Assembly (NCBI RefSeq): GCF_964188315.1
Contig: NC_135659.1
Coordinates: 50,902,001-50,966,000 of the forward strand
Length of the DNA stretch: 64,000 nucleotides
Reading direction: 5' to 3'
Source of the DNA: Podarcis muralis
Lineage: Eukaryota
This document shows positions 10,156 through 46,800 of this stretch, in pieces (the stretch's first letter is position 1; every line of letters starts with the position of its first letter). The position numbers and the translations under genes are program-made. Under the pieces are notes generated by a model, which made no database searches, was not told the DNA's origin, and was given only the letters and a program-made list of their open reading frames with translations.

Positions 10156-13100
10156 ATGGGCTATTCAGCCCTAGCCACAACAACCTTGCTGCTGCTCCTG
10201 GCAATTGCTGCTACGCTGGCAGACGTGGCTGAGAACAGGACCCGAATATGCCAGCCTGCACCACTCTGGAAGATCAATGGGGTGGCCCCCATGGCTGGGA
10301 TGGAGGGCCAAGTGACAGTGGTGGCACTGTTGAAAGCCAGCTGACAGTTCTGCCTCAAGCAGGCCGCCAGGTGAGTTCATAGAGAAGATTGCCTGAGTCA
10401 GGAGCTGTTAGGTCGCAGCCACACCATACATTTGACGCACATGGCTTTCCCCAAAGAGTCATGGGAACCGCAGTTTAAGAGTGCTGGGAACTGTAGCTCT
10501 CTGAGGGGGTAAATCACAGTTCCCATAATGCTTTGGGGAAAGTCACACGCTTTAAAAAGATGGTCTGGATGTGACTAGAAAGTCAGATATGTGTTGGAAC
10601 CCTGTATCTGGTGTTCAGTGGCAATATCACAGCTCTTAAGGTCACATCTTTGTCCCTACGCTTTCTACCAGGAAACACAGAACTGAACTGATTGTTTATA
10701 AGCTCCAGTTCAACAATCAAAAATTGAGGCCCGGGCTACAGCAGGCCAGATATAACACGCATATAGATGGTGGTTGCAATTTTCCTGGTGAATTACAGCT
10801 CAAGTATAATATGTATCATGTAACTTATTGCTGGATCTATGTAGCAGGAACTGCTGTAATGGCAAATCCAGTGAACTGATAAATGAAGGGGCCTCCGTCC
10901 AGCAGTGCAGGCTCATATCCCACATGGTATATGCAGAGGGCAAGGGCTGGAACCTATAATTGTGCACTGCATTTCCTAAACGTTGCTTGTTCTTCCTACC
11001 CACCAGCCTTGGCAGCTTGCAGAGGAAGCTGTCACTTGAAGGAGTGACCAATGTCAGCTTCATGATTGTGAATGAGAAGACTCCTTTCTCCAGGGCCATG
11101 TACTGGGAGCTCAAACGGCATGCCCCAGAGGGAGTTCCTGTTTACCAGCAGCAGATTCTGGAGCCTGACGTCTGGCAAATTCTAGATGGGGACAAGGATG
11201 ACTTCCTGATCTATGACAGGTCAGTGCTTAAGGGAGCAATTCTAACTCCCCACCCACCCAGACTGATAGGGTTTTTGGAGAGTCAGGGCCACTGCTGTGC
11301 ATAGCAGCCGGGGCAGAAGGGAGGGAAGGCAGATCACTGAGCCAGCTTGGAGCTGGTGCAGCAATTGAGCCTGGAAGAAGCCCAGTTCTGGCAGTGGGAC
11401 CATCTCAGGATCCAATGAACTGCAGGGCGGCTCAGTCCAGCTCCTTCCTTGGCTGCTGAAAGCCCCTGCTGCCACCAGCAGGGATCCCATCAGCAGCACT
11501 AGCGGGGGCAGAAGAGGGTGCTCCGTAGGCAGCTGCTGACGGGAGGCCAATGGGGGTCTGCAGGCCTGGGCAGAAGGAAGGAAAGTAAGATACAGTGGTG
11601 CCCCGCAAGACGAATGCCTCGCAAGACGAAAAACCCGCTAGACGAAAGGGTTTTCCGTTTTTGAGTTGCTTCGCAAGACGATTTTCCCTATGGGCTTGCT
11701 TCGCAAGACGTTTTGCGATTTTTTTTCGCTCCCCCCCTCCCTTTTTCTAAGCCGCTAAGCCTTTAATAGCTGCTAAACCGCTAATAGCGCTAATCCGCTA
11801 AGCCGCTAATAGGGTTGCTTCGCAAGACGAAAAAACCGCTAGACGAAGAGACTCGTGGTACGGATTATTTTCGTCTTGCGAGGCACCACTGTATATGGAA
11901 TTCAGGATTCTTGAATACATTATCAAAAAGTCTGTTTGGGGACACATCTGGAAAGAAAGGACATACCATGATGTAAGTGTTTCTCTTTACCATCATGTCT
12001 CGCAACTGTTGTTGAGGAAAACCAGATTGTTCAGGCCAGGTTAGATTCATTTCCAGTGTAAATTAGTGGATTACAGGCTCTCCTGACACTAACTTTATGT
12101 CCATTTGTTTCCTGGCTCTCGGGCTTTGCAGGTGCAGCAGGCTGGCTTTCCACATCCAGCTGCCATACAGTTTTCTGCACTTGCCCTATGTTGAAGCAGC
12201 CGTGCGGTACACACACAGCAAAGACTACTGCGGCAATTGTTCCTGGTACCCCTCTAACAGCAGCCAGGAGGTAGGGACTTGAATCCCCTCATCAACTTCC
12301 TTTTCAACTATTTTATTTAAGCCAGACATTTCCTCATTTGCCCATCCTGAACTTCTGCCTGGGAATTCTAGGTTTCTAATCAGATCGGTCTTACAGCAGG
12401 GATGTGGGAGCAGAAGGTGGAAGGGAGGGTTTTATTATATTGGGCCACTACAGCAAGCAAGGAGAAAGGATGTTGAGATACCACAAAGCATCTTTCATCT
12501 TGACAGGAAGTAAACCATCTTGAAATAAAAACCTCAGAAGCAAATTGCAGATGGAGACACCAGGTCTGCCACAGTCACAGATAGTGTAGCGTGGAGGGGT
12601 CCAGGAGAACCCAGGTGGGAGGACATGCTAAAACCCCCCCCCCCACTTTCAGCTTCTCACACTCCCCCAAGTGCTTTTCTCCCCAGTTGAGTTCAGATAC
12701 TAAAAGTGAGATTGACTTGGAGAAAGACACTTTGGAACAGAAGCTGTGTGGCATCAAGTGCAGGAAAGGTTTGGTTCCCCTCACCCAGGCACCCCTTTTC
12801 TCTAAAGTCAACCCCACCTTCCTGTTTTGCACATGGTGAGGCAAGACCTGGATCTGCTGCTATCATGTACTGCTTGAGCCTCACCCAGTAGCCATTGTCT
12901 GCCCTCAGTTATTGAAAAAAATAAATTAACACCCTTAATTTGTCAGGTTGAAGTGCTTCCTGTTCCCAATGAATGGGAGCATATTGTTCCTTGGACAGAA
13001 GAAATAATAACTGCTGTCTTGTCCTGTGGTGTCACTTCCTGCCCCATCAGTGATCTGAAAGTTCATTCCTCAAGGTGGGATTGCAGGAGGCCCCTGATGT

Positions 13101-13893
13101 ATTACCTATTTTAGTTTTTTGCTGCCCCGATAGCCAATGCAGCAAAATATTATAAATACCTTTTAAGCCATTTCGACCATACCGAGAGTGAAGTCAAACA
13201 GATCTCCTTCCAGGAGTCGGTGCAGGTTTTTCTGATCTGGAGAAATCAAACCTTCTTCCCTCCCTGCTCTTTTGAGAGAGATATATACTTGGCTTAAACT
13301 CCTGTACAGCTTTTTGCCTCTCAAACTTTGGGCTTTTAAAAACCATTTCTACGCCTAAACATCCAGCATGTTTACTCATTTAAACTTCTATTTTACACAT
13401 TCTTTAAAACCACTTTTTAAGTGACTGCCAGGCAATCACCATTCTTCACAGCCAATTTCTCCTGAAAACAGAAAGTAGCAGTTGTTCTGAGCTCAGTTGA
13501 TTTTGGAAGTTTACATATTTTGTCAAAAAGGGCTGAATGCAGATCCCTTCAGATATATACATCCATCTTCACTTTTAAAAATGTGTTTCTGTCTTCACCC
13601 TAAGCCCATCTGTATACTAGAATCTTTCATTACCTTCACAGGTGAATAAGACAGCAAGTACTAACGTGACGACAACTGAGGCATCTGGACACAAAGAGAA
13701 GCACCTGGAAGAACCCAGGTACCATCACGATGAGCCAAGCCAAGAAGCACCTAACACCAAGCACATAGCCCATCACTATTCACATCATGGAGGAGTCGGC
13801 AACCATAAAGCCTTGGGTTTGAGCAGTACACACCAGCCAGTTCTCCACTCTCAGAATCGCTCACAGAAGCATCAAACAAGGGAATCCCCATAA
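10156..13893 (+). CDS. SELENOP2: Selenoprotein P2 (SelPb), 272 aa, with Sec encoded by UGA at 10342-10344 (codon 63)
   Basis: Exons 10156-10370, 11007-11219, 12132-12270 and 13642-13893 are all GT-AG, total 819 nt and are in frame. Signal peptide, VTVVALLKAS-U-QFC (UxxC), GDKDDFLIYDRC, LAFHIQLPYSFLHLPYVE, CGNCS and a His-rich C-terminus are present; there is no Sec-rich tail. A SECIS lies downstream. Confidence 0.93.
11593..11891. mobile_element. Tc1/mariner (Tigger-like) MITE in SELENOP2 intron 2
   Basis: TIRs CAGTGGTGCC(C/T)CGCAAGACGAA, TA flanks, internal CGCAAGACG and CCGCTAA repeats. Confidence 0.9.
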
Positions 13894-14389
13894 AACATTT
13901 AAACTTCAACGTATGCAACACCCAACTGTTAGCCATAAGCATACTTAGCACTAAGCAAGCTTTTAAGAAGAGCCAGGGGGCAAACTTACATGCATCAGAA
14001 GGAAGAAATATGATGGCTCAGTTTTCAGCAGGGGAAGGGAAGTGAATGTTCCACTCCCTAATCATTCAAGGTCTCTCAACAGATAGCAGAGGACACAACA
14101 AAAACTTTTGTTGTGTCATATATGTGATTGGAAAGTTTAACTGCTTGTCCACAATGAGACTTCTATCCTCATTTTGAATCTGTCTCCCAGTTAACCTCAT
14201 ATCCACCAGTTTTGTTCCACCAAGCCTTAAGGTGGTGTTCCTCTTGGGCTCGGATGGATTTTTAGATACATCCCATTTCTGTGGTGAGGACCGCCTAAGG
14301 AAGCCATCTTGTTTTCCTCAGGAACACAGAGCTGCTATGGTAATCAGCTTCTTGAGAAGCCAATTTTGACCCCATTTTTGCATTTCCTG

Positions 14390-14458
14390 CTTTTCTGCAC
14401 TCAATGAAGCATGTGATGTAAACTTTCTGTCACCACATGCTGACACCGTACATAAAAG
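14390..14458 (+). ncRNA. SECIS element (form 2) in SELENOP2 3'UTR
   Basis: ATGA at 14404, helix GCATGTG/CACATGC, apical AAA at 14420-14422 with AC/GT mini-stem, TGAC at 14441 completing the quartet, and lower helix CTTTTCTGCAC/GTACATAAAAG. About 500 nt after the stop codon. Confidence 0.88.
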
Positions 14459-17269
14459 CATGTCCTTGGAGATGGAAGGATGGGGATCAGAACTGGTATT
14501 AGCAGGAGGATGACTGACTGTGGCAGAGAAGGCTGACTTTGAGCCTAGGGCTCAAGATTTTGTACATTAAAGTCCATGCACACAAATTACTAGCTTGTAA
14601 AAAGACATTTGTTGTATTGCTGGAAGTAAAGAACATTTGCGGTTTGTAGGAATGGAAGTGGTGAGACAGAATTAGCCAAGTTTGCAGTTTGATAGAGGTA
14701 TGAAAGACAGAGAAGTCTGAGGTGAGAGTTGAGTTTGTCAGGGCTATGAGAGCTGAACAAGGGAAGAAAATGCCATTTGTCAGGAAAATTCATGAAAAGG
14801 GATGCACTGCTTGCTGATTAAAAGTAGTATAACTGTTTCTGGGAAAGAATGTTGGAAATAAATTCTCTGAAATGTTTGAAGTCTTTGCTCACAATACCTT
14901 AATGTACAAATGGTGCCATTTATTTCAGACAGTACACAGCATTGTAGAACACGTATTCACCTTCAACGTTTAAGAGATGTCCCATAGTTTATCTGCATTT
15001 TTGGCATACTAAGCAGTCCTTATTGAGAATAGTCCAGGTTCCTGTTATTTGTTGAAGGTCAGTGAATTGGTGCACACTGTACAAGTCCTCCACATCCCAG
15101 TTTTAGGAAGCTACTGCTACAAATATTTACGGGAGGGTGTAATCTGTCTTTATTGTATTGTTAATGCTGATATGTATCCACCTATAATCTGTTTATTCCA
15201 AAGTAACCCTAGTTAGTAAAGCCAGCTAGACTAGACTGCAAATGGTGGCAGCTGCCCATAGGTTTATGGCATTTCTTTGAAAGCCTCAATTCCTTTTTAT
15301 TACATCTCAGCTGGTGGCTAAAGGGACCAATCTTCAATTTACAGGACCTGCCATAGGTATAACATCTATAATAGGTAGCTCGCAATTATAACCCTGCTGA
15401 TTACACTCACACATGCTGTAGACTGGAGTGAAGAACTTATTTCAGCCCAAGGGCCACATTTGCTTCTGGGTAGCCTTCTGAGGGCTGCCTGCCAGTGGTG
15501 CACAGGGCCAGAGGCAAAAGGGAATGAAGCAACAATGGTTAATTTTACCTTGCATACCAGTAGGCTAGTTTCTTCATGCTCACACATTCCTCTCTATTCT
15601 TCACCCAGGCAAGCAAGAAGCATGATCAGAATTCAATGAAATAAATGAAATAAAACAGTTCTTCACCTGGCCCCAGATATTCATAAGGCTTGCTGCTGGT
15701 GTCAGGCAAGCTTTTCTAGGAAAGACAGGGCAGTATAGCTGGAAAGACCCAATCAGAGTCCCTGAAAGTGGGGAGATCTAAAGAAGGGCCTCCTGGTATA
15801 ATATTAGTAGTTCAGGAGGTTCTTGTGGAAGAAGGCAGCCTTTGAAATTCTGCAAGCAATAAAAGGGCATTAGGCTGTCAGTGAGGTGCTTATAGTTAAC
15901 AAGCCACCTTTGGTGTAAACAGCATACTTACTGCAGATTTATTTATCCCCTTGTGTATATCAAAACTTTCCTGATATCTGTACATGCTGGCTACTCTTAA
16001 CATACATGTATTAGAGCTATAACATAATTAATAGCTTTTGGTAATATGTCATATAATTAATCGCCTTCACCCAGGGCATAACCAGCACAATGGACTCTAA
16101 ATAAAATACTCTCAACTGTGATTCAACTTGCAACCTTAGTTGCTTAACAACTAGTTTAATGTTCTTAGCAGTCTTGCTCTCCACAATACATAACGTAGTA
16201 ACAAACAAAAACAATATCCCCACCCCACCGTGCAGCCATATGGTAGCTGCTATGATCTGGTGTAATATTTGATTACTTGCCCAACTGACATGCAAAGATT
16301 TAGCTGTCCTTCCCACATGCTGTTCCGTTCCCTTTTTATGTTCCTTTAGTTCATTTCCTACTTATGTACATACCTAGCTGAAATCATCCCTGCCCCCCAG
16401 AAATCTGCAGAGGCCCAATCTACAGCAGCTAGGTCATAATTTAATTGTTAAGAGACTATTTTCTTGCTGATAGTTTTGTACCAAACAAAGTAATTATATG
16501 GCTGGCTTGTTTTGGTTTTTTTAACATTCCAATTGTATTTACAATCTCTTCCCTTTATTTCTATGTACAGTATTACCATTATTAATTACCAAAGAAAAAA
16601 TATTCAGTAGTACTAGTGCTAAAAAAAGATGGGCAAAATTATGTTTTGCTTAGGACAACAACATTCCTACCTAATGCTGGCCTTGGGCTCTGATCCAGCT
16701 TTCCTGATGCTCTCTGCCCCAGCCCACAGCTCCCATTATCCAAACTAAACTCCTTTGCGTCATGTCCTGTTTGCTTACATTTGCAGCAGAGTCCACAGGT
16801 TCACAGCAAAACTGGAGCAAGGCTATTATTATCATGTTTAATGCTAATCTCATCTAACATGCAGGTCAAATATTTGCTAAAGATCCTCTTTAAACTGGCC
16901 CCTCTATTTGCAGCAGCCAGAAAATCTCTTATAGTTTGCCTGTTTATGCCTACTCAGAAAAAAGCCTCATTTGAGTTCTATGGCACTTACTGCCAAGTAT
17001 GTGGGTATAGCATTGCAGATGTAGTCTCTTTTTGATGGACAAGGCTGGCCCTACCATTGGGCAGAGTGAAGCAGCCACCTCAGATGGTAGATGGTAGGGG
17101 GATAAAAGTGGAGGCAAGATGTTGGAAGAGAATTGCCTGTGCCACACACAGCCTCCCCTGCTGCCCTCAGGCATGGTGGAGGATGCAATCCCATTGCGAA
17201 TGGAAAAAGAAGACATCTGAAGGCCGCCCTGCATAGGGAAGTTTTGTAATGTTTAATTATGTTTTTATA

Positions 17270-17350
17270 TATGTTGGAAGCAGTCCAGAGTGGCTGGGGC
17301 AACCCAGTCAGATGGGTGGGGTGCAAATAATAAAACTATTTTTATTATTA
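17270..17350 (+). mobile_element. LINE (L2-like) 3' tail
   Basis: GCAGTCCAGAGTGGCTGGGGCAACCCAGTCAGATGGGTGGGG...AATAATAAA plus (TTA)n. A closely related copy is at ~42280-42350 and a more distant one at ~50050-50160. Confidence 0.6.
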
Positions 17351-17973
17351 CATGTATTTTGCCTTGGTACTAAATCACATTAGGGTTTTGTTTGACTGCA
17401 TGGTTACAGAATCAAATCAAATAGATGCTCAGTTAAAGGAGCCTTAGCATTTAGGGTAGAATTGGTAGAACAGCAAAGTCTTTCCCACCGATTTTTATTG
17501 TTAAAGCTCTCCAGAGGGAAGCAGTAACAATATTATTGATGTTATCATCTTCCCCTCTAATAATTTTTCTCCATGGATATTGGAAGTGACTTTGACTGGA
17601 TGAGAAGCGTTTTGGGAGGAACTATGGAAAATTAAGTACTGAGTGAAAAGGAGGGTTCGGATCCTCTTACCTTCTGAATAATTTGCCTTAAAAATCAAAC
17701 CTACACAAGTCTACAGTGTGGGTAGTATAGCACACATAGAAAGGAGTGATAAAATTTGCTAGGCTACAGTCTGTGAGGAACAGTCCTCCTCCCTCCCTTC
17801 GTGTATGCTCTGTTTACAATTCCCCCTGCATTTGCACCCATAAGCTTGTCTCTTACTTGCCTAGCAGCGAGGACCATGAGGTTGTGTAAACATCTGTACA
17901 GCTTTTTTATCTTCTACTTAACATTGTCATTTGCTCTAGAGGCCCTTTAACCCTGTTCATCTGAGGGATCAGC

Positions 17974-18118
17974 NNNNNNNNNNNNNNNNNNNNNNNNNNN
18001 NNNNNNNNNNNNNNNNNNNNNNNNNNNNNNNNNNNNNNNNNNNNNNNNNNNNNNNNNNNNNNNNNNNNNNNNNNNNNNNNNNNNNNNNNNNNNNNNNNNN
18101 NNNNNNNNNNNNNNNNNN
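17974..18118. other. Assembly gap (145 N)
   Basis: Run of N. Confidence 1.
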
Positions 18119-20539
18119 GTGTCCATGTCTATTTCTCCATGGAATCCACACTATGGGCTGCCTTCAGGAGATGTAGTACTTCTGTTGGAAGCCTCAAAAG
18201 TGGGACAGCATTAGGCTTTAATCAGCAACGGAGGAGGCAGCTGAGGGGTAAATATGCTTTAATGCCTCTTAAGTACACTTTCCCTGCCCAATCCACTTTC
18301 CCCTGTTGGGCAGTGAAGTAAAAAGAAACAAAAACCTATCTAGCCAATTCAGAGGGGTTTTGTTAACTAGCTTCATTATTCAATTAAAGTGTCTAACGGT
18401 GCTGTAGCAACTCATTTATAGAAAATGGTCTGGCACATTTAAAGTTTACACATGTAGAGTAATTGCTTCCATTGGAATGTTATGTTCATATAGTATTCAG
18501 GAGTATTTACATAGGTGATACAATATAAAATCCAACATGCTAATGAGTTTCTAAAACTTATTTAAGAGCCATTCCCTATAGATAGCCCATGTTTGATTAT
18601 TCTTTAAGTTTGCAATTTTATACATACTGATTACAGTGTAAAATCTTACATGCACACTGAAATCACTAGGATTTTCTTCTGGATACGAATGCATGGGATT
18701 CTGCTTTGAATCTTTCACCATCTGTTCTATAATAAGAGTCCTCACATGTAATTCCCAAGTATAAAACTCATTTATCAAATAATTCATTCAAAGCAGTATG
18801 CTTCTGGTTTACAATGATATTCATTTTATAATGAGCTCAGAAAAGTTTAAGAAATTATTTCAAATCATCATTTTAAACAATATTTCTACTGACAACTCAG
18901 AAGTCCTCTCGTGAATATGTAGGTTTTATAATGTATAGCTTCTACAAAATATTGGTAGAGCTTCATAAAATACAGTAAGAATAATTACTTCACTCTAATG
19001 TATATGATTCTATTTTTGCATGAAAGTACATTTGAAAACTAGCTGTGAGCTCAAAACTCCTAAAAATAAGAACAGTCTTCTCCAGCACATCTAAATATTT
19101 TATTTTTGTTTTAGGTATGGGTTGCTGCAACTTTAATGGCAACTTTCTGCAATTTTAAATCCCACACCTACAAAAAAAAGTTTTAAGAACAGCTTACAAC
19201 ATATAATTTTAAAAAGCATAATGATTAATCTCCAGGTTCTGTGGCACCAGTTCTTATCCTGCTTATCTTCACGTGCTTTGGAGGTGTGGTAAGCTAGATT
19301 TCTACATCCATAATCGACAGTGTTATCTGCCAATATCATAATGATGTTGAAAAGTTGTGCGCTCCGCATGCAAGGATCAATGTGGCCATTGTTCTTGGTA
19401 CGCAAGTATGAAGCTCTTCTGATTCCTAATCCTCATTAATCTTACTCCTTGTACACAAGAAGAAATAGCAGCTGCCTTTGTTAGCTCCCCTCTATTTTTC
19501 TAGCAGTTAATTCTGTTTGTCTGTGTGATACACCAGATGCCTATTATTACCTTCACAGGTGTGTAACACAGCAAAGACTAGTATGATGGCAAGTGAGGAT
19601 ACAAAACATGGAGAATCAGAAGGAAAGGAGAGCCAAGGAACACTCAGCCCTGGGTACAAAGCTCACAGAAAATAGAAAACAGCTACAGAAGCCTTGGGTG
19701 TGTGCCAGCACATTTCAGCCACTCCTCTTAGAGCCACCCATAGAAGCAGGGCAAGGGGGATAAAGTGAAGGGACTGCCTCAGAAGAATGTACTTTGAATT
19801 AACCAGAAGTCTGCTAGTAATCCTTACTGCATTAATCCACTTGACGCTATCAATTTAAAAGAGGATCCCAGAAATAGGAGGTATTTGAATATCACCATCA
19901 TAATTGATGTTCTGTAATCTTAGAAAATCAAGTCCTTTTAATATAGTGCCTTGTGGGGACATTTCCTAATGTTAGGTGGCAGTGCCACATTGTGGGTTCT
20001 GTCAGTTAGTGCAGCAAGTACTGTTTCCCGCTTCCTCAGGATATTCCCCAAATTGCAGGATGTTCAACCTGAATGGGTTCTCAAGATCAAGCACTTTTTG
20101 CAGCTCTTTTGTTTTCTAATGCTTGGACAAGTAAAGGAAGTTTGCTTTTAAGATGCCATTTTATCAATTTATATATCATATATTACTCCTTTCATATTTC
20201 TGGGAAGTATGCTGATCCTCCAATTTACTGAGCGCAGGTGTGAAACATGTAATCTTGATCTACCTCAGTCTGGCTTCAGGTTGTTTTGGGACCTAGTCAG
20301 CATTAGTGGTCCTGATGGGTGACCTTGATCACAGGAGACATAGGAGGGTGTGACCCTGCAGCTCACTCTTTTTTGACAACAATCATGGTACCCACTTGGA
20401 CCAGCCATGTTGGCTGGGGATTTGTGGCACTGTACTTCACTGGTTCTGTTCCTTTCTGCAGGACCTTTCCAGACTATAAACCCCTGGCATTTTTACTATT
20501 GGGTCTCTCACGGTACCATCACATCCCCAATGCTTCTAA

Positions 20540-20880
20540 ACATCTACCAGGTTACCTAAATGACCACCTTATCCCTTATAAACCAGCCAGATCACAGCAC
20601 TCTTCTGAAGCCCTCCTGACATACTGGTAGATTAAGTTTCTATGGGAACCAACATTTAGCATAGCAGCACAGGTGCATTGTTTCAAGACTTACCACTTTG
20701 ATAATTTGCCACTGATAAAAGTTGCTTTCTCCAGTCATTTTGAGATGATTTATTTGATTCCTTGTTGGTAATTTGATCTGTATTTTATGTTGTTTTATTG
20801 TACTGTATACTGCCATGATTTTTTTCTATGACTTAGCAGTTCATACACTTGGAAACAGAAAATAAATAATGTAGAGAAAT
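20540..20880 (+). mobile_element. L2 LINE 3' fragment
   Basis: Translation GYLNDHLIPYKPARSQHSSEALL resembles the L2 ORF2 C-terminus, followed by a T-rich UTR and AATAAATAA. Confidence 0.5.
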
Positions 20881-21667
20881 TCCAGAACTGCGTAAGTACA
20901 CAAAATGTTGTGAGAGGGAAAGGACCATATCAGAGCCAGTACTGATAGGAAGGCAATTAGGACTACGCAAGGACTAAGATCAATGGATGATTTTAGGCTT
21001 GCGGTTCAGGTTTTGGATAGTGAAGGTCTGTAAGTCAATGAGTTATTAGACTGAAGGCTGCAGCATCTGTTACATGGCTAAAAGGGTTTGGCAACATGGT
21101 TAACAAAGTCTATGTAGCAGGGGTTGCATAAAGCTTAGGGTTTTTTACATGTTGAGATGTATTTGATTATCTTTTCACACCCAGCTCAGAAATACCATCT
21201 ATTACAAGCTATTGCATGTTCCTGCTATACTGAGATCACTCAATTAATTAGAGACATAGGATTCCCATTTCCCCCCGAGTTTAATGACAGTACAAAACAT
21301 CAGAAAAACCGACTGTTCTACATGCATCCCTGGGCCAATCATATACATGTTACTGGTCCTTTTTATCCACACTAGCACAAGGAGCAATTTCCCTTTCCTG
21401 GTTCTGATCAAAAGGACATATACTATTAACAATAGCTATTAAGTACTGACCAATGTTTCAGTTCATAATCCATTTACTCCAAAGCTGTCCTAGTAACGTA
21501 CATTGGATTGATCCAGAATAAATGGCATCTGAACTATAAACCAGTTAGCTCACAATAATTTTACTATTAAAAATAAAGGGAATGACAAGTACAGGTCTGC
21601 TTTTACTTATACAGGTTACAGAATAGATGCCTTGTACAAAAAAAAACACCCCAATCACACAGCACAT

Positions 21668-24600
21668 TTAGTTCTGCTTGGAGAAGTACTCTCTACTCTT
21701 CTGAACATCAGGCTTGATAGTGTCTTTCCCAGGATGCCAGCCAGCAGGACACACTGAGGAGATAATAATATTAACTTTTAAGTTACTCCTGGAGTACAGA
21801 CCGAAAACAGCATACAAAGAACTAAGTTGTTATGTCCATCACTAGACTTCACACAAGATGACTTGGATCACTACAACCTCCGTCATCTATTTGACTAACT
21901 TCTGGAACTAGCAGCAGTCACCACCCAATCTCTCCTACAGATGGGCTTCTTGATGCAATTGTGTACCTGAGATGTACAGGACAGCTGCCTCTTGGAAAAA
22001 CTGAAGTGATTCACAGCTTATGCATCTAAAATACTAGCCAAATAAATGCCTGACAGCAACAAAAGACTGAAATAATGACTGAGAGCAGGGAGGTTGGATG
22101 GAATACAGGCCAGAGCTGAGAGCGAAAGACTAGTATTATGTGTCCATTGAAAAATAACAGCTGAAAGAGCCGCTTTGAGGGACTGAATGAAATGGGAATG
22201 AGTTTAGAGAACCAATGAGAGGCATATGTAGAAAAGGATAGACATTATGAAAGTTAGAACAGTCTGTACACGTTATGTTCCTTAAGTAAATACATGTTTC
22301 TGTTTTAACTGTTCTGGTCAGGGTAGAGTCTAACATAAATATATCTCACTGACTAAGAATATAAAGGAGGAGCCCTATTGCTTTCTGTAATTAAATAGGT
22401 GGTTGATGCAGGTATTTTAAGGAAAGTCTTGATTCAGTGAAAAAGGAGGATTGCCCTTAGTGGCCACCTGGAAACAAACCTTTGCAAGGGAGCCTGCGAA
22501 TATCATAATATGGTGGGCAATGTGGCGGAATAGTAATATATACGAGTTATAACTGACATTTATTTGTTGGCAGTAGGGAAGAAAAGGGGGCATGTTGTGC
22601 CCTGAGGGGGCACAAAATATACCATATTTTTCTGTGTACAAGTCTAGGTTTTTTCCCCTAAAAAATTATGTTAAAAATTAGGGGGCGTCTTATATATGGA
22701 TAGTGCTGAGGTTGGACTAGCGATTGGTTGTTGCTGCAAAAATACATGGGGGTGTCTTATAGTCGGAAAAATATGGTATGTTCTGTAGGAAATGGCTTCA
22801 AACAAGAATCCCACAGAGAAGACAAGCAAATAATGTGAGGTGCCAACGCTTTCCCTAACACAGCAGCCCCCAAATGCAACATTTGAGATTTCTTCCCATG
22901 GGAATGAATGGTAGCTACTCACTTATGTGGGAAAATGCTACTGTGTATATGGGATACTGTCTTTACAGGGACAGCAGTTACTGTCTACCTCTGCCTCTAG
23001 TTTCTCGGTGGAAAGATGTTCTGCCCCTCCACCAGCTGTCAATACTATCTCTTATTTGTCCTGTAGATATGGCTAGAAACAAGAGAGACTCTTAAAAGCC
23101 TATTTCTATTTGCCTATTCCCGGACTTTATTTTAGCCATACAAGATGCTACTCAGGAACTGCATTTTTATCAATGAGATACTCTTTTAGAGAACTACAGT
23201 GGTACCTCGGGTTAAGTACTTAATTTGTTCCAGAGGTCCGTTCTTAATCTGAAACTGTTCTTAACCTGAAGCACCACTTTAGCTAACAGGGCCTCCTGCT
23301 GCTGCCGCGCCGCCGGAGCACGATTTCTGTTCTCAACCTGAAGCAAAGTTCTTAACCCGAAGCACTATTTCTGGGTTAGTGGAGTCTGTAACCTGAAGCT
23401 TATGTAACCCAAGGTACCACTGTATAGTCCTAGATTTTCACATTTATGTTTCTTTAAACATAGTATCCCCTTTTGCAGGGAAGAGGATACACTATGAACT
23501 GTTAAGTGCATCCTCCTTTTTCACTGAGAAACTTAACGGCAGTTCATGCTTGCCTAGCCTGAACATGACAGTCTTACCTTCTCCATGTTTGTCTGTAAAC
23601 TGAAAAGCCTGAACTAGCCGGAGTGTTTCATCAACTGAGCGACCAACAGGGAGATCATTGATTGTGATCTGGCGTAAGATTCCCTTATCATCAATGATGA
23701 AGAGGCCCCTAAAGAGAAAAGGCACACACACACACAAACACTTAAATGTATGGTGGCAGAATCCAAAAAACTACAAGCTAGCATTCAATACCAAGTTCTG
23801 TCCCCTTTTAGTTCTTCTGAAAACATCAAAACCAGTTCTCTTAAGATCTGGTACAACTTCTACCCTATATATAAATTAAAAGCAAAACTATATGGAGACT
23901 CATTTGCAATTCCAAGCACTAAAACCTATATAGAACATTTCATAAAGGAATGTGGTAAAACTTCCTACGTACAGACTCTTTACCTTTCACCCTTCAAGAG
24001 ACTTCTAATTTGAATGTTCAAACTTTTGTTACAAGATACGAGCACTATTCTAAAGAACAGTGTTTAAATTTGAATTGGTGTTTTTCAACCCAGGTGCTGA
24101 TAGCGGATCTGGGAAGATGCCAAACGGAGATTGCACATTCACTTTCCTCTTCCCAGTGAAAAGGACATTCATAATTAAGGGCAGCCTTATCAACAGAGCT
24201 AGTAAAGTGTGCATGTTGACTCAAAACTTGCATCACTTATTTTCTGTGGGCTTCTCCCTCTGATTAAGTTTTATCTTTTAGAACCTTTATCATGCAGTGC
24301 TCTATATACCACAAGTCACTAAGAGGCTGCAGTGGTAACCTTACCTGTAGGAAATGCCTTCATCTTCTTTTAATACTCCATACTTTTTAGAAATTTCACG
24401 GTTTGTGTCAGACACCAAGGGAATACGCATGCAGCCTAGTCCACCCTGTTTTTTGGGTGTGTTGATCCTGTTAACAAGAAGAAGAAAGGCTTTTATAAAG
24501 CAGGTTAGTATTTCAGTAATATCCTTGTCCTTCTGTACACTTACACATTCGACTGCAGCAGAATATCTAAGAGATTCAGTGGTCTTTGCAAAAAAGGCAG

Positions 24601-43800: not shown

Positions 43801-46800
43801 TAGGTGATGCTCTCCAAGAGATGGTTGGAAATGACAAGGTAAAAAAAAAGGAGCGAGAATATTGCTGCTGCAAAAAGGCTGGGTGGGTGGAAGTTTCATG
43901 TTTATTTCAGATTGGCTCTGCTTACAAAGTGTAATTACATCTCCATATAAACCTACCAAGATGGCAATCAGCTATTGTTCCTGCTGCCTGCTGTGTGTTA
44001 GTGGGCTCTGTTGCTTTGACATTCTGCCTATCCCTTTGCTAAATGTCCTTTTGCTGCAAAAAAAATTCACAGGGCACATTAAAATATGTCTGTGTTGTTC
44101 TGTTGACTCTGGAAATGAACCTTCCTTAGCATAATAGCACAGAAGGCACACACAAAAATCTAATCAAGGGATGAGAAACTTCTTGAGCACTGAAAAGATT
44201 CCCTTCCCCGTTCTTTCTAAAAGGCCATTAAGCGGGAAGAGCTGTTTGTGACTTCCAAGTTATGGAACACCAAGCACCACCCAGAAGATGTGGAGCCAGC
44301 TCTAAAGAAGACCCTGGAAGATCTAAAACTGGAGTACCTGGACCTCTACCTCATGCACTGGCCACACGCCTTCGAGTGAGTGTCCGTAGGAAGGAAATGT
44401 GGAACATGAAACCACAGCAGCGCTTAGAGGGTATGGGAGGGTCAGATATCTTTCACCATCTGCACAGATAGGAATCTGTTGTCACAGAATGATGAGCCAG
44501 CCCTGTTGCCCCTTCTGTTCCTCAGGTTTACAGCAAACACCGTTCATTTTGTTTGCCTTCACTGTTGAGGGTTTGAGATTCTTCTTTCTTTTACAAAAGG
44601 AAAAGAAGGGAGGAAACAAAAGCCTAATGAATGAAAATGAATTCTTAAGAGGCCTATGGAAAAGAAACCTGTGGTCCTTCAGTTGTTGCTAGATGCTAAC
44701 TCCCATCAACCCCAACCAACTAGTGAGGGATTGTGAGAACTGTAGTCCAACCACAACTGGAGGACCATAGGTGCCCCACCCTGTTCTGTGCCAGCTTCTA
44801 GATTCTGTGCTGTTATAACCAAAGCTGTGGATTTATAGGAGTTACTTTTCCAAGGCCTAAGATGGTCAGTCATAACTCAATTTATACAGCCATAAATTTA
44901 TATGGGTTGGTTTGTAGTTAACAATTAGTTAACAATTAATATCATATCAACTACTTGACCACATTGTAAGTGGGAAAGGAGAAGAGTTTGTTCTGGATCT
45001 GGGTCACATGACATGGGATTTTAGCAGTGCTTCTACTGAGTTGAACTTAAATAGACTTAAGATTGTGCTAGTTATCTGTTTGCTTTGCACATTTTTTATA
45101 ATAGGCGGGGGGACAACCTCTTCCCCAAGAATCCTGATGGCACAATGCGCTATGACTACATTGACTACAAAGAAACTTGGAAGGCGATGGAGAAGCTAGT
45201 GGAAAAGGGTCTGGTGAAAGCCATTGGGTTATCAAACTTCAATAGCCGTCAGATTGATGATATCCTTGGCATAGCTTCTGTAAAGCCAGCTGTGCTACAG
45301 GTAAGGCAGATGCAGAAAAAGAGGGAGCAGGTTACTTTCTGAGATGGTTTTCTTGGCAGGCGAGAGAAGGTGGGCCATAAGGATGGATGCTTCTGTTCCT
45401 GTTGGGTGTGGGGTGGCTGTGCCATGGAACTGCCCCTGCAGAATGGAACGTTCTGTACAAAAAAGTCCGCTTGACTCTTCTAAGAAAGGTTCAAGTAGTT
45501 GGGACTTGCAGTTTTTAGTTAAAGCGTCTGTTTACTTTTAAGGGTTTGTTTCCTTTTAATATGAGAAATGTGATCAAAATAGCCCAGCTTTCCCACTCTT
45601 ACGTTATCAAGATTTCTCTTTCCTTTGGTGGTTTTGTTTTTAGCTTTGCCCATGCTGTTTGAGGCTGTTATTTTGAAGAAGCAGTACTAGAGTAGGGTCT
45701 TGACTCTTTCTCCTCACTCCATTTCCCTGATTTAAATTGGGCCCCCAACATATTGTTTGCTCCTTGGCAGAAAGTGAGGAGTGGAGGGAGAAGTGATGCA
45801 TTTATAGTGAATCTCTTGACAAAAAGATGTGATGATTTGAGTGAATGGGTACTTCAGACTCACTTGAGCCATTAATTATCTTTAAACTTATTTTTCATAG
45901 CATACTGTTGGTTCTGGTACCCAGTTTGAGAATTAACTGTGATAGATCCTGGTGAAGTGCTATCAGCGATTTGCTAAAACATGTGATCAATAAGCAGAAT
46001 TCTTATGGCAAAGGAAAGGGTGGTGTAGTCCTGCAGACTCTGAGTGGCTTGCATGATCCTCTGCAACAGAGACATTTGTTTAAAAAAACCCTCTCTTAAT
46101 AATGTTCTCCTTTCAACATTGATTTCAGCATGACACAACCGGTCTCACAGCATTCCTTACAGTATTTGCAAACGAGAGTCTGGTAATAGAAGGCATTTTG
46201 TAAAGCAATAGGGATCCTTAAGATCAGGTGTCTTGAGAAGGAAGGGAAGCCAAAACTTGATTGTTTCAGAAAATATATACTTTTTTTATACAAAAATTCT
46301 ATAATGGCATAAATGGTTTTACAAAGCTGTTATGCCTGGAGAGTGCGTTATCTGCATGTTGTCTTAAAATAAGCAGGACTGCTGCAGAATAAACAGGTTG
46401 CAGATTGTAGCTAGTATGTGTAGTAAAGGAAATGTTATCAGCCCCTGCAGGGTGGAGATAAAGAAATGGTCAGTGACTTGGGTTATTCTACTCCCAGTTA
46501 ATCCAGCCCCAACCGTGATCAATCTTGCACTTCTGCTTTAGAATGTTTATGCCACAAGTGGGAGGGTTTCCTCTAAGAGCAGAAATTATGTGGCTTGTGA
46601 ATGCCATACTGCCGTTTCTGCCCATATATGAATTGACCTGCATCTGCCTTTCCTGCTTCTGAAGTGCAGGTGGGTGTCCCCCCCTTTTTTGCAGTCTTCT
46701 CATTACTATATACTGCTTTTTTAAATAGGTGGAATGTCACCCTTACCTTGCCCAGAATGAACTGATAGCTCACTGCCATCAGAAAGGGCTGGTGGTAACT

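What the first reader, a model, noticed from the sequence alone, without database searches (positions are those of the whole stretch)
15689..19770. Unannotated, decayed tandem duplicate of SELENOP2 directly downstream
Seen: four segments are collinear with the four SELENOP2 exons. Exon 1: CTTGCTGCTG...TGG..AGATC...AAGGCAGC CTT TGA AATTCTG CAAGCA, retaining a TGA at 15843 near the Sec position. Exon 2: AGCTCTCCAGAGGGAAGCAGTAAC, ELWKI versus DVWQI. Exon 3: RCGKL...KDQCGHCSWY versus RCSRL...KDYCGNCSWY. Exon 4: shared acceptor ATTACCTTCACAG|GTG and AAGCCTTGGGT. Stops, frameshifts and no recognisable SECIS. Inference: an old lineage-specific selenoprotein duplication that was then lost, which I do not know to be described in squamates. 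Exons 1 and 2 are the weakest alignments (by eye).
Basis: partly seen in the sequence, partly recalled or inferred. Interest (0 to 1): 0.7.

Follow-up and report, generated by a model that had tools for sequence, protein, structure and literature searches.

The report
Decayed half-copy of lizard SELENOP2
About 5 kb downstream of the wall lizard's working selenoprotein P2 gene lies a dead, broken copy of only that gene's last two exons, apparently left by a very old duplication that also left traces in a skink; it is real and does no evident work.

Summary
The finding is half right. DNA profiles built from six squamate SELENOP2 genes hit the window a second time at 19254-19401 (exon 3, E 9e-13) and at 19511-19749 (exon 4 plus 48 nt of its intron, E 3.5e-24). 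Both hits are on the + strand and collinear with the parent gene. The copy is dead. Exon 3 has three in-frame stops and +4/-1/-3 indels, exon 4 has nine deletions, and no SECIS is detectable.

No profile finds them. The N gap (17974-18118) interrupts no verified segment.

The relic keeps an intron, so it is a DNA-level duplicate and not a retrocopy. It is present in Podarcis lilfordi. A skink (Lerista) has an exon-3 end and a decayed SECIS at the same intergenic position. Gecko, two iguanians, a rattlesnake and an alligator show nothing. Trees place the relic outside the lacertid+toxicoferan SELENOP2 clade (89-93% support), although the AU test does not reject a lacertid-only origin.

Stranded RNA shows only antisense read-through from PRDX1 and no sense reads. 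My verdict is an ancient, probably partial, tandem duplicate that is now a pseudogene fragment. It is a small addition to selenoproteome history and is not functional.

The parts
10156..13893 (+). Parent gene: intact SELENOP2. It has four coding exons (10156-10370, 11007-11219, 12132-12270, 13642-13893), encodes 272 aa, and has the Sec TGA at 10342-10344.
   Evidence: Local splice and translation check. Pfam SelP_N matches exons 1-3 (E 5e-9, 2e-24, 1e-14). Orthologous exons were found in six other squamates and an alligator.
14353..14529 (+). Parent 3'UTR block that contains the SECIS. It is conserved in squamates and was used as the profile for the relic-SECIS search.
   Evidence: blastn to Crotalus, Lerista, Gekko and Phrynocephalus. 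Alignment. It is the only window hit of the profile (E 9e-52).
19254..19283 (+). Relic of the 3' end of intron 2. An AG acceptor is still present at 19282-19283.
   Evidence: The nhmmer exon-3 profile hit starts 30 nt into the intron flank. The blastn match 12117-12158 / 19269-19310 spans the acceptor.
19284..19407 (+). Relic exon 3. It is about 69% identical to the parent in the alignment that also includes the flanking intron, and reads CGKLDFYIHNRQCYLPIS**C*KVVRSACKDQCGHCSWYAS. In-frame stops are TAA 19339, TGA 19342 and TGA 19348. Indels are +4, -1 and -3 nt. Homology is lost after SWY.
19408..19558 (+). Relic intron 3. It is about 150 nt long, against 1371 nt in the parent. The acceptor-proximal part (19511-19558) is still alignable, and the AG is at 19557-19558.
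   Evidence: The nhmmer exon-4 profile, which includes 60 nt of intron, hits from 19511. Phrynosoma's intron/exon-4 junction matches 19510-19592 at 74%.
19559..19749 (+). Relic exon 4. It is 71.5% identical to the parent over 246 aligned nt (the alignment includes the intron flank). Nine deletions (7, 7, 1, 8, 3, 10, 2, 3, 2 nt) destroy the frame. The first stop in the entry frame is TAG at 19673.
15689..15860 (+). This is not part of the relic and is chance-level similarity.
   Evidence: 15% of random windows score as high. No hit.
17500..17640 (+). This is not part of the relic and is chance-level similarity.
   Evidence: 21% of random windows score as high. No hit.
17974..18118 (.). Assembly gap (145 N). 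It lies outside every verified relic segment and was not filled.
   Evidence: Flanks are collinear with L002 16688 / 16830.
19148..21273 (-). Low-level minus-strand RNA that covers the relic in antisense. It is continuous with the 3' end of PRDX1 (poly(A) site at about 21274) and is read here as read-through.
   Evidence: Depth is 4-25 with the first mate on + only, the same orientation as the PRDX1 exon (depth 180-300). There are zero opposite-orientation reads over 19148-19882 and no splice joints.

Best explanation
The stretch 19254-19749 is a non-functional, non-processed pseudogene fragment. It is the decayed 3' half (end of intron 2, exon 3, a shortened intron 3, exon 4) of a tandem DNA duplicate of SELENOP2, lying between SELENOP2 and the 3' end of PRDX1.

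Shown:
- The homology is real.
- The intron structure is retained.
- The frame is destroyed.
- No trace of exon 1, exon 2 or a SECIS is detectable in Podarcis.
- No sense-strand RNA appears in two stranded libraries.
- The relic is present in a second Podarcis species.
- A second exon-3 end and a decayed SECIS lie at the same position in a skink.

Inferred:
- The duplication happened once, early in squamate history. It post-dates the squamate-specific CSWY motif and pre-dates the lacertid/toxicoferan split, and probably the skink split.
- It arose by unequal crossing-over.
- It either copied only the 3' part of the gene (from intron 2 through the 3'UTR) or lost its 5' half early. Either way the copy had no promoter, no signal peptide and no Sec redox motif, and has drifted neutrally since.
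- Other lineages have lost it beyond recognition.
- Today it does nothing on its own, and is merely traversed in antisense by PRDX1 read-through transcripts.
For: Homology:
- nhmmer gives E 9e-13 (exon 3) and 3.5e-24 (exon 4). These are the only extra hits in 64 kb.
- tblastn beats 300 of 300 shuffles.

DNA-level copy: the intron-3 acceptor and about 48 nt of intron are retained.

Breakage: three stops plus frameshifts in exon 3, and nine deletions in exon 4.

SELENOP2 type and squamate type: KDxCGxCSWY. Turtles and birds have CSLY and crocodilians have CIHY or CFHY.

No 5' half: exon 1 and exon 2 profiles hit nothing downstream in any of the eight loci.

Age:
- The relic is 93-97% identical between the two Podarcis species, like the surrounding DNA.
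- Skink L003:17281-17328 gives E 1.5e-8, and the protein-level match over 17213-17320 scores 38.5 bits against a shuffle maximum of 25.8.
- The skink SECIS-like block L003:21386-21497 gives E 0.0016-0.005, and 0 of 500 shuffles reach it.
- In the exon-4 and concatenated trees the functional genes reproduce the species tree. The relic falls outside the Podarcis+Toxicofera clade (93/93 and 89/90). The two relics sit on one side of a branch (66/76).
- The relic's branch length of 0.32-0.45 is similar to that of fast-evolving functional exon 4 since the basal squamate node.

Expression: only antisense reads were seen.

Annotation: no gene is called there in P. lilfordi.
Against: - The AU tests do not reject a duplication confined to the lacertid lineage (p 0.09-0.15). 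They also do not reject the skink relic being sister to the skink's own gene (p 0.10-0.17).
- Long-branch attraction could by itself pull the two decayed relics together and toward the root.
- The two relics do not align to each other by blastn.
- I sampled one skink, one gecko and three toxicoferans. The gecko and Phrynocephalus flanks end before PRDX1, so absence there is not complete.
- Partial duplication versus early 5' deletion cannot be told apart. No second copy of the neighbouring conserved block was found; a simple tandem model of a segment including that block would predict one.
- The tissues of the RNA runs are unknown, and SELENOP2 itself was not on the stretch I laid. Absence of sense reads is therefore weak evidence.
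Confidence: 0.85

Rival explanations
1. A complete four-exon SELENOP2 paralogue (a 'SELENOP2b' selenoprotein with its own SECIS) arose in early squamates and worked for some time. It was then pseudogenised, independently or not, and its 5' half was later deleted.
For: The skink copy carried a SECIS, so the whole 3'UTR was duplicated. The Cys-rich CGxCSWY motif is still readable in both relics despite roughly 30-40% nucleotide divergence, which could reflect a period of constraint.
Against: There is no trace of exon 2, the best conserved exon, or of exon 1 in either Podarcis or the skink, while exons 3 and 4 survive. In the skink only about 350 nt separate the conserved non-coding block from relic exon 3, which leaves no room for a 5' half. 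No second squamate SELENOP2-like protein appeared among 249 homologues. A SECIS relic is equally expected from a partial 3' duplication.
Confidence: 0.3
2. Two independent, lineage-specific tandem duplications, one in lacertids and one in skinks, which look alike only because both are decayed.
For: The AU tests do not reject lacertid-specific or skink-specific placement. The relics share only about 50% identity and do not align by blastn. The relic is absent from the gecko and three toxicoferans.
Against: Both relics have the same position (between the conserved block and the PRDX1 3' end), the same strand, and the same missing 5' half. The best trees put the Podarcis relic outside Podarcis+Toxicofera (89-93%) and join the two relics (66/76). 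A few nucleotide states are shared by both relics against all functional genes, for example TCT for TCC in CSWY and TTATCTGCC. Divergence from the same-species parent is as large as between squamate families.
Confidence: 0.15
3. The segments still function, either as alternative 3' exons of SELENOP2, as a non-coding RNA, or as a regulatory element kept by selection.
For: The region is transcribed at low level. The acceptor region is comparatively well kept (79% over 53 nt).
Against: All reads have the orientation of minus-strand PRDX1, and there are no joints. The reading frame is destroyed. There is no conservation in the gecko, iguanians or snake, while a true conserved element 2.3 kb upstream (16672-16938) is kept in all of them. 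The reads carry several indel variants inside the relic.
Confidence: 0.04
4. The relic derives from the other vertebrate paralogue, SELENOP (SELENOP1), or is a processed retrocopy.
For: None beyond general SelP_N similarity.
Against: Its best protein matches are squamate SELENOP2. It has the squamate SELENOP2-only CSWY motif. Nucleotide similarity runs through the SELENOP2 intron-3 acceptor, so an intron is retained. The locus is HPDL-like / SELENOP2 / PRDX1 / AKR1A1 / NASP.
Confidence: 0.01

Closest known systems
SELENOP2 (SelPb, selenoprotein Pb) of squamates, the parent gene at 10156-13893
   Same: Exon 3 and exon 4 sequence, the exon/intron 3 boundary, strand, and the squamate-specific KDxCGxCSWY motif.
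   Different: The relic has no exon 1 (signal peptide, UxxC Sec motif) and no exon 2. Podarcis shows no SECIS. The relic has three stops and more than ten indels, a 150-nt rather than 1371-nt intron 3, and no sense transcription detected.
Duplicated (non-processed) pseudogenes and partial tandem gene duplicates in vertebrate genomes
   Same: Tandem, same-strand, intron-retaining copy with disabling mutations next to its parent.
   Different: It is unusually old for a still recognisable neutral relic: shared by two Podarcis species, probably shared with a skink, and about 30% diverged from the parent.
Salmonid SELENOP2b (Tico et al. 2026, PMC13134290) and the four salmonid SelP genes (PMC6301783)
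   Same: A lineage-specific extra copy of SELENOP2.
   Different: The salmonid copies come from whole-genome duplication and are intact, expressed selenoproteins. This one is a local tandem fragment and is dead. The 2026 survey names lineage-specific SELENOP2 changes only in salmonids (a duplication), Anura and sharks (Cys conversions), Eutheria (loss) and lampreys.
Loss of SelPb/SELENOP2 before placental mammals (PMC3316567)
   Same: An example of SELENOP2-family gene death in tetrapods.
   Different: In placentals the only copy was lost. Here the working copy remains and only a surplus copy decayed.

Membership tests
Functional SELENOP2 / SelP_N selenoprotein gene | Open reading frame across the SelP_N domain | tested here: not met
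   There are three in-frame stops and +4/-1/-3 indels in relic exon 3, and nine deletions in relic exon 4. Pfam finds nothing in the stop-free pieces, though they are very short.
Functional SELENOP2 / SelP_N selenoprotein gene | N-terminal exon with signal peptide and UxxC (Sec TGA) redox motif | tested here: not met
Exon-1 protein HMM and DNA profile give no hit downstream of the parent gene.
Functional SELENOP2 / SelP_N selenoprotein gene | SECIS element in the 3'UTR | tested here: not met
   The Rfam E-value scan of 13000-23000 gave no SECIS hit. That scan also failed to report the parent's SECIS, so it is a weak test. The squamate SECIS-block profile hits only the parent at 14353-14529. 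Pattern, folding and local alignment are at chance level. A decayed SECIS is present in the skink's copy only.
Functional SELENOP2 / SelP_N selenoprotein gene | Sense-strand, spliced transcription | tested here: not met
   There are zero reads of sense orientation and no joints over 19148-19882 in two stranded bulk RNA runs.
Duplicated (non-processed) pseudogene of SELENOP2 | Statistically significant homology to the parent gene | tested here: met
   nhmmer E 9e-13 and 3.5e-24. 0 of 400 background windows and 0 of 300 shuffles reach the scores.
Duplicated (non-processed) pseudogene of SELENOP2 | Parent's exon/intron structure retained (not a retrocopy) | tested here: met
   AG acceptors are present at 19282-83 and 19557-58. 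Intron similarity is found upstream of both relic exons. A 150-nt intron lies between them.
Duplicated (non-processed) pseudogene of SELENOP2 | Disabling mutations | tested here: met
   The TAA and one TGA are shared with P. lilfordi.
Duplicated (non-processed) pseudogene of SELENOP2 | All parental exons represented (complete copy) | tested here: not met
   Only exons 3 and 4 are detectable. It is therefore filed as a pseudogene fragment or partial duplicate.
Processed pseudogene (retrocopy) | Intronless, with poly(A) tail and target-site duplications | tested here: not met
   Intron 3 is retained with its acceptor. No poly(A) tract follows the relic.

The most novel reading that the evidence does not exclude
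Early squamates had a second, complete SELENOP2 selenoprotein gene with its own SECIS in tandem between SELENOP2 and PRDX1. The lacertid and skink fragments are its remains. An intact, expressed copy may survive in a lineage not sampled here, such as tuatara, dibamids, other scincoids, teiids, amphisbaenians or anguimorphs. That would add a selenoprotein to the supposedly stable 24-25-member tetrapod selenoproteome.
Probability: 0.1. Interest if true: 0.55.

Novelty: new member of a known kind. Interest (0 to 1): 0.3.

Why it matters
By itself this is a dead gene fragment with no evident function. Its value is historical. The two most comprehensive vertebrate selenoproteome surveys I could read (PMC3316567; PMC13134290) describe no SELENOP2 duplication in any tetrapod. 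This relic, together with the skink's exon-3 end and decayed SECIS, indicates that at least a partial tandem duplication of a selenoprotein gene happened in early squamates.

It gives a defined place to look in new reptile genomes for an intact extra copy: the SELENOP2-PRDX1 intergenic region. It is also a caution for annotation pipelines that might merge the relic exons into SELENOP2 models.

Tried and rejected
2. Protein HMMs on six-frame translations with X at stops were too insensitive for the relics (iE 0.003-0.2). DNA profiles worked far better.
3. The Rfam E-value scan of 13000-23000 gave no SECIS, not even for the parent gene, so it is not informative here. A weak mir-31-like hit at 17101-17166 is far below threshold.
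4. A crude SECIS pattern-plus-fold scan and local alignments of three SECIS sequences against 19760-21270 were at chance level. Two weak collinear matches at 19907-19938 are not significant.
5. An exon-3-only tree was unresolved.
6. A search for a second copy of the conserved block 16672-16938, which would be predicted if the duplicated segment included it, found none.
7. A search for an exon-4 relic in the skink found none.
8. Direct alignment of the lizard relic region to the skink downstream region matched only the conserved non-coding blocks.
9. Origin from SELENOP1 and a retrocopy origin were rejected (see rivals).
10. The turtle locus (P0161) was not on record.
12. The joined four-exon protein was never sent to any search tool. 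All searches were exon by exon by reference. Exons were joined only inside a local script to check frame and length.

Full report
SETTING. The SELENOP2 N-terminus is identical to the Podarcis muralis UniRef entry. The DNA is 93-97% identical to P. lilfordi. The working SELENOP2 gene has four coding exons: 10156-10370, 11007-11219, 12132-12270 and 13642-13893. It encodes 272 aa with one in-frame TGA at 10342. Pfam SelP_N matches exons 1-3. A conserved 3'UTR block holds the SECIS at 14353-14529. Gene order in this and six other squamate loci is HPDL-like(-), SELENOP2(+), PRDX1(-), followed here by AKR1A1 and NASP.

OBSERVATION: WHAT HOLDS. A sensitive blastn of 9800-15000 against 15001-21500 gives four collinear, same-strand matches. 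Two lie in exon 3: 12117-12158/19269-19310 and 12218-12249/19370-19401. Two lie in exon 4: 13629-13681/19546-19598 (79%, E 4e-7) and 13808-13871/19689-19748.
- tblastn of the exon-3 peptide finds 19285-19407 as the only significant extra hit in the whole window (E 1e-4).
- None of 300 locally shuffled versions of the downstream region reaches that score.
- DNA profiles built from six squamate functional genes are far more decisive. The exon-3 profile hits 19254-19401 at E 9e-13. The exon-4 profile, which includes 60 nt of intron, hits 19511-19749 at E 3.5e-24.
- These are the only hits in 64 kb besides the parent gene.

OBSERVATION: WHAT FAILS. Of random same-size windows, 15% and 21% score as high. 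They are absent from the tblastn lists. Neither protein HMMs nor DNA profiles for exons 1 and 2 find anything outside the working gene, either here or downstream in any of the seven other loci fetched.

THE GAP. N 17974-18118 lies between the unsupported 'exon 2' and the first verified relic base (19254). It interrupts nothing that is real, so the frame question is moot. Its two flanks are collinear with P. lilfordi positions 141 nt apart.

ANATOMY OF THE RELIC. An AG acceptor sits at 19282-83 and relic exon 3 spans 19284-19407.
- Relic exon 3 is about 69% identical to the parent in the alignment that also includes the flanking intron. It has +4, -1 and -3 indels and the stops TAA 19339, TGA 19342 and TGA 19348.
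- Homology stops after ...CGHCSWY, and the last seven parental codons are unrecognisable.
- A roughly 150-nt intron remnant follows, against 1371 nt in the parent. Its last 48 nt are still alignable, and the AG is at 19557-58.
- Relic exon 4 spans 19559-19749. It is 71.5% identical over 246 aligned nt (the alignment includes the intron flank), with nine deletions of 7, 7, 1, 8, 3, 10, 2, 3 and 2 nt.
- No SECIS was found by the squamate SECIS profile, by pattern and folding, or by local alignment.
- Because an intron and its acceptor are kept, this is a DNA-level duplicate and not a retrocopy.
- KDxCGxCSWY is the squamate SELENOP2 form. Turtles and birds have CSLY and crocodilians have CIHY or CFHY. 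The source was therefore squamate-type SELENOP2, not SELENOP1 and not a pre-squamate gene.

COMPARATIVE EVIDENCE. P. lilfordi has the same relic with mostly the same lesions (L002:18011-18145 and 18286-18399), and its annotation calls no gene there.
- The skink Lerista edwardsae has a second exon-3 end 3.8 kb downstream of its SELENOP2. The protein-level match is at L003:17213-17320 ('...DCYLPYYVEHTMSSAYHNSHGSCSWYNSNSNQE', with a stop). It scores 38.5 bits against a shuffle maximum of 25.8.
- nhmmer hits L003:17281-17328 at E 1.5e-8, and 0 of 500 shuffles reach it.
- The skink also has a decayed SECIS-like block at L003:21386-21497, with ATGA changed to GTTA and the TGAC quartet changed to TATT. 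E is 0.0016-0.005 and 0 of 500 shuffles reach it.
- In both lizards the relic lies on the + strand, between a squamate-conserved non-coding block (window 16672-16938) and the 3' end of PRDX1. Both lack any trace of exon 1 or exon 2.
- Gekko, Phrynocephalus, Phrynosoma, Crotalus and Alligator show nothing. The Gekko and Phrynocephalus flanks end before PRDX1.

TREES. On exon 4 alone, and on exons 3 and 4 concatenated, the functional genes recover the accepted tree (Gekko, Lerista, (Podarcis, Toxicofera)).
- The Podarcis relic falls outside the Podarcis+Toxicofera clade, with support 93/93 and 89/90.
- When the skink relic is added, the relics share one side of a branch at 66/76.
- The AU tests do not reject a lacertid-only origin (p 0.09-0.15) or a skink-only origin (p 0.10-0.17).
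- Long-branch attraction acts in the same direction as the result. The single ancient origin is therefore the best reading and is not proven.
- Relic-to-parent divergence in exon 4 (62-71% identity, depending on the alignment) is as large as between squamate families (58-71%). That fits an age comparable to the deep squamate splits.

EXPRESSION. Two stranded bulk RNA runs of the same species cover 19148-21205 at depth 4-25. All reads have the orientation seen on the last exon of minus-strand PRDX1 (depth 180-300, poly(A) site about 21274). There are no reads of the opposite orientation over the relic and no splice joints. The relic is therefore only crossed in antisense by PRDX1 read-through or a distal 3' end. 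The reads also carry several indel variants inside the relic (at 19172, 19218, 19338, 19457 and 19493), as expected for unconstrained DNA. Two caveats apply: the tissues are unknown, and SELENOP2 itself was not on the stretch I laid.

MECHANISM. The most likely history is a tandem segmental duplication by unequal crossing-over in an early squamate. It copied SELENOP2 from within intron 2 through the 3'UTR, or else a full copy was truncated early. The result had no promoter, no signal peptide and no Sec redox centre, so it has decayed neutrally since. It remains recognisable in lacertids (exons 3 and 4) and skinks (exon-3 end and SECIS), and has been erased elsewhere.
- The partial-copy sub-claim rests on two points. 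The 5' half is missing in both lineages, and only about 350 nt separate the conserved block from relic exon 3 in the skink.
- It is weakened by the failure to find a second copy of that conserved block.

LITERATURE. The 2012 and 2026 vertebrate selenoproteome surveys name lineage-specific SELENOP2 changes only in salmonids (a duplication), Anura and sharks (Cys conversions), Eutheria (loss) and lampreys. They describe no squamate duplicate or pseudogene. A full-text search for SelPb or selenoprotein Pb with pseudogene or lizard found nothing further.

PROCEDURE NOTES. The joined spliced protein was not sent to any search. Searches were made exon by exon by reference, and relic pieces were searched apart or with X at stops inside local scripts. 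The gap was not filled.

VERDICT. This is a real but half-sized relic, an ancient and dead partial duplicate of SELENOP2. It is ordinary in kind, with modest evolutionary interest.

Noticed in passing
window 16672-16938 (+); L003:16591-16853, L004:17881-18170, L005:19881-20149, L007:17423-17685, L002:15377-15643: A single-copy non-coding block between SELENOP2 and PRDX1 is conserved across lacertid, skink, gecko, agamid and phrynosomatid (67-77% identity), with a weak trace in Crotalus. It has invariant cores TTATCATGTTT and AAATATTTGC plus TGTTTGC, which look like forkhead/GATA-type sites. It may be a liver-type enhancer. It is not related to SELENOP2 exons.
   Followed up: partly
window 16082-16182: A second, smaller conserved intergenic block matches Phrynosoma L007:16591-16691 (72%) and Lerista L003:16452-16510.
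   Followed up: no
window 19148-21273 (- strand RNA): PRDX1 transcripts continue about 2.1 kb past the main poly(A) site (about 21274) at roughly 4-8% of exon depth, and stop fairly abruptly near 19150. This could be read-through or a distal alternative 3' end.
   Followed up: partly
window 11590-11893 (SELENOP2 intron 2): A roughly 300-nt repeat-like insertion is absent at this site in P. lilfordi, where the alignment jumps from L002:10528 to 10535. An 81% copy lies elsewhere in that locus (L002:3388-3740). This looks like a recent species-specific mobile-element insertion.
   Followed up: no
L003:17213-17328 and L003:21386-21497 (Lerista edwardsae): The skink carries its own relic of a second SELENOP2 copy: the end of exon 3 with its donor flank, and a decayed SECIS about 250 nt beyond the PRDX1 3' end. 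No exon-4 relic is detectable. Hairpin-like repeats at 17957-18198 also occur in SELENOP2 introns.
   Followed up: yes
window 19172-19501: RNA reads from other individuals carry five indel variants and three base variants within about 330 nt of the relic. Three base variants are seen over the next 1.3 kb. The numbers are small.
   Followed up: no
window 44245-44343 (+): An exon with the aldo-keto reductase motif ([29 protein letters not shown]), presumably AKR1A1, turned up as a spurious tblastn neighbour. Together with PRDX1 and NASP it fixes the synteny.
   Followed up: no
P0001 (Logan contig, 1965 nt): An unspliced SELENOP2 exon-2-like sequence from an unknown organism is only 79% identical to Podarcis. 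It has a crocodilian-like ...IYDK exon end but a squamate/turtle-like EILEPDVWQILDGDKDD. It could come from a deep reptile lineage such as tuatara, or it could be a divergent paralogue.
   Followed up: no
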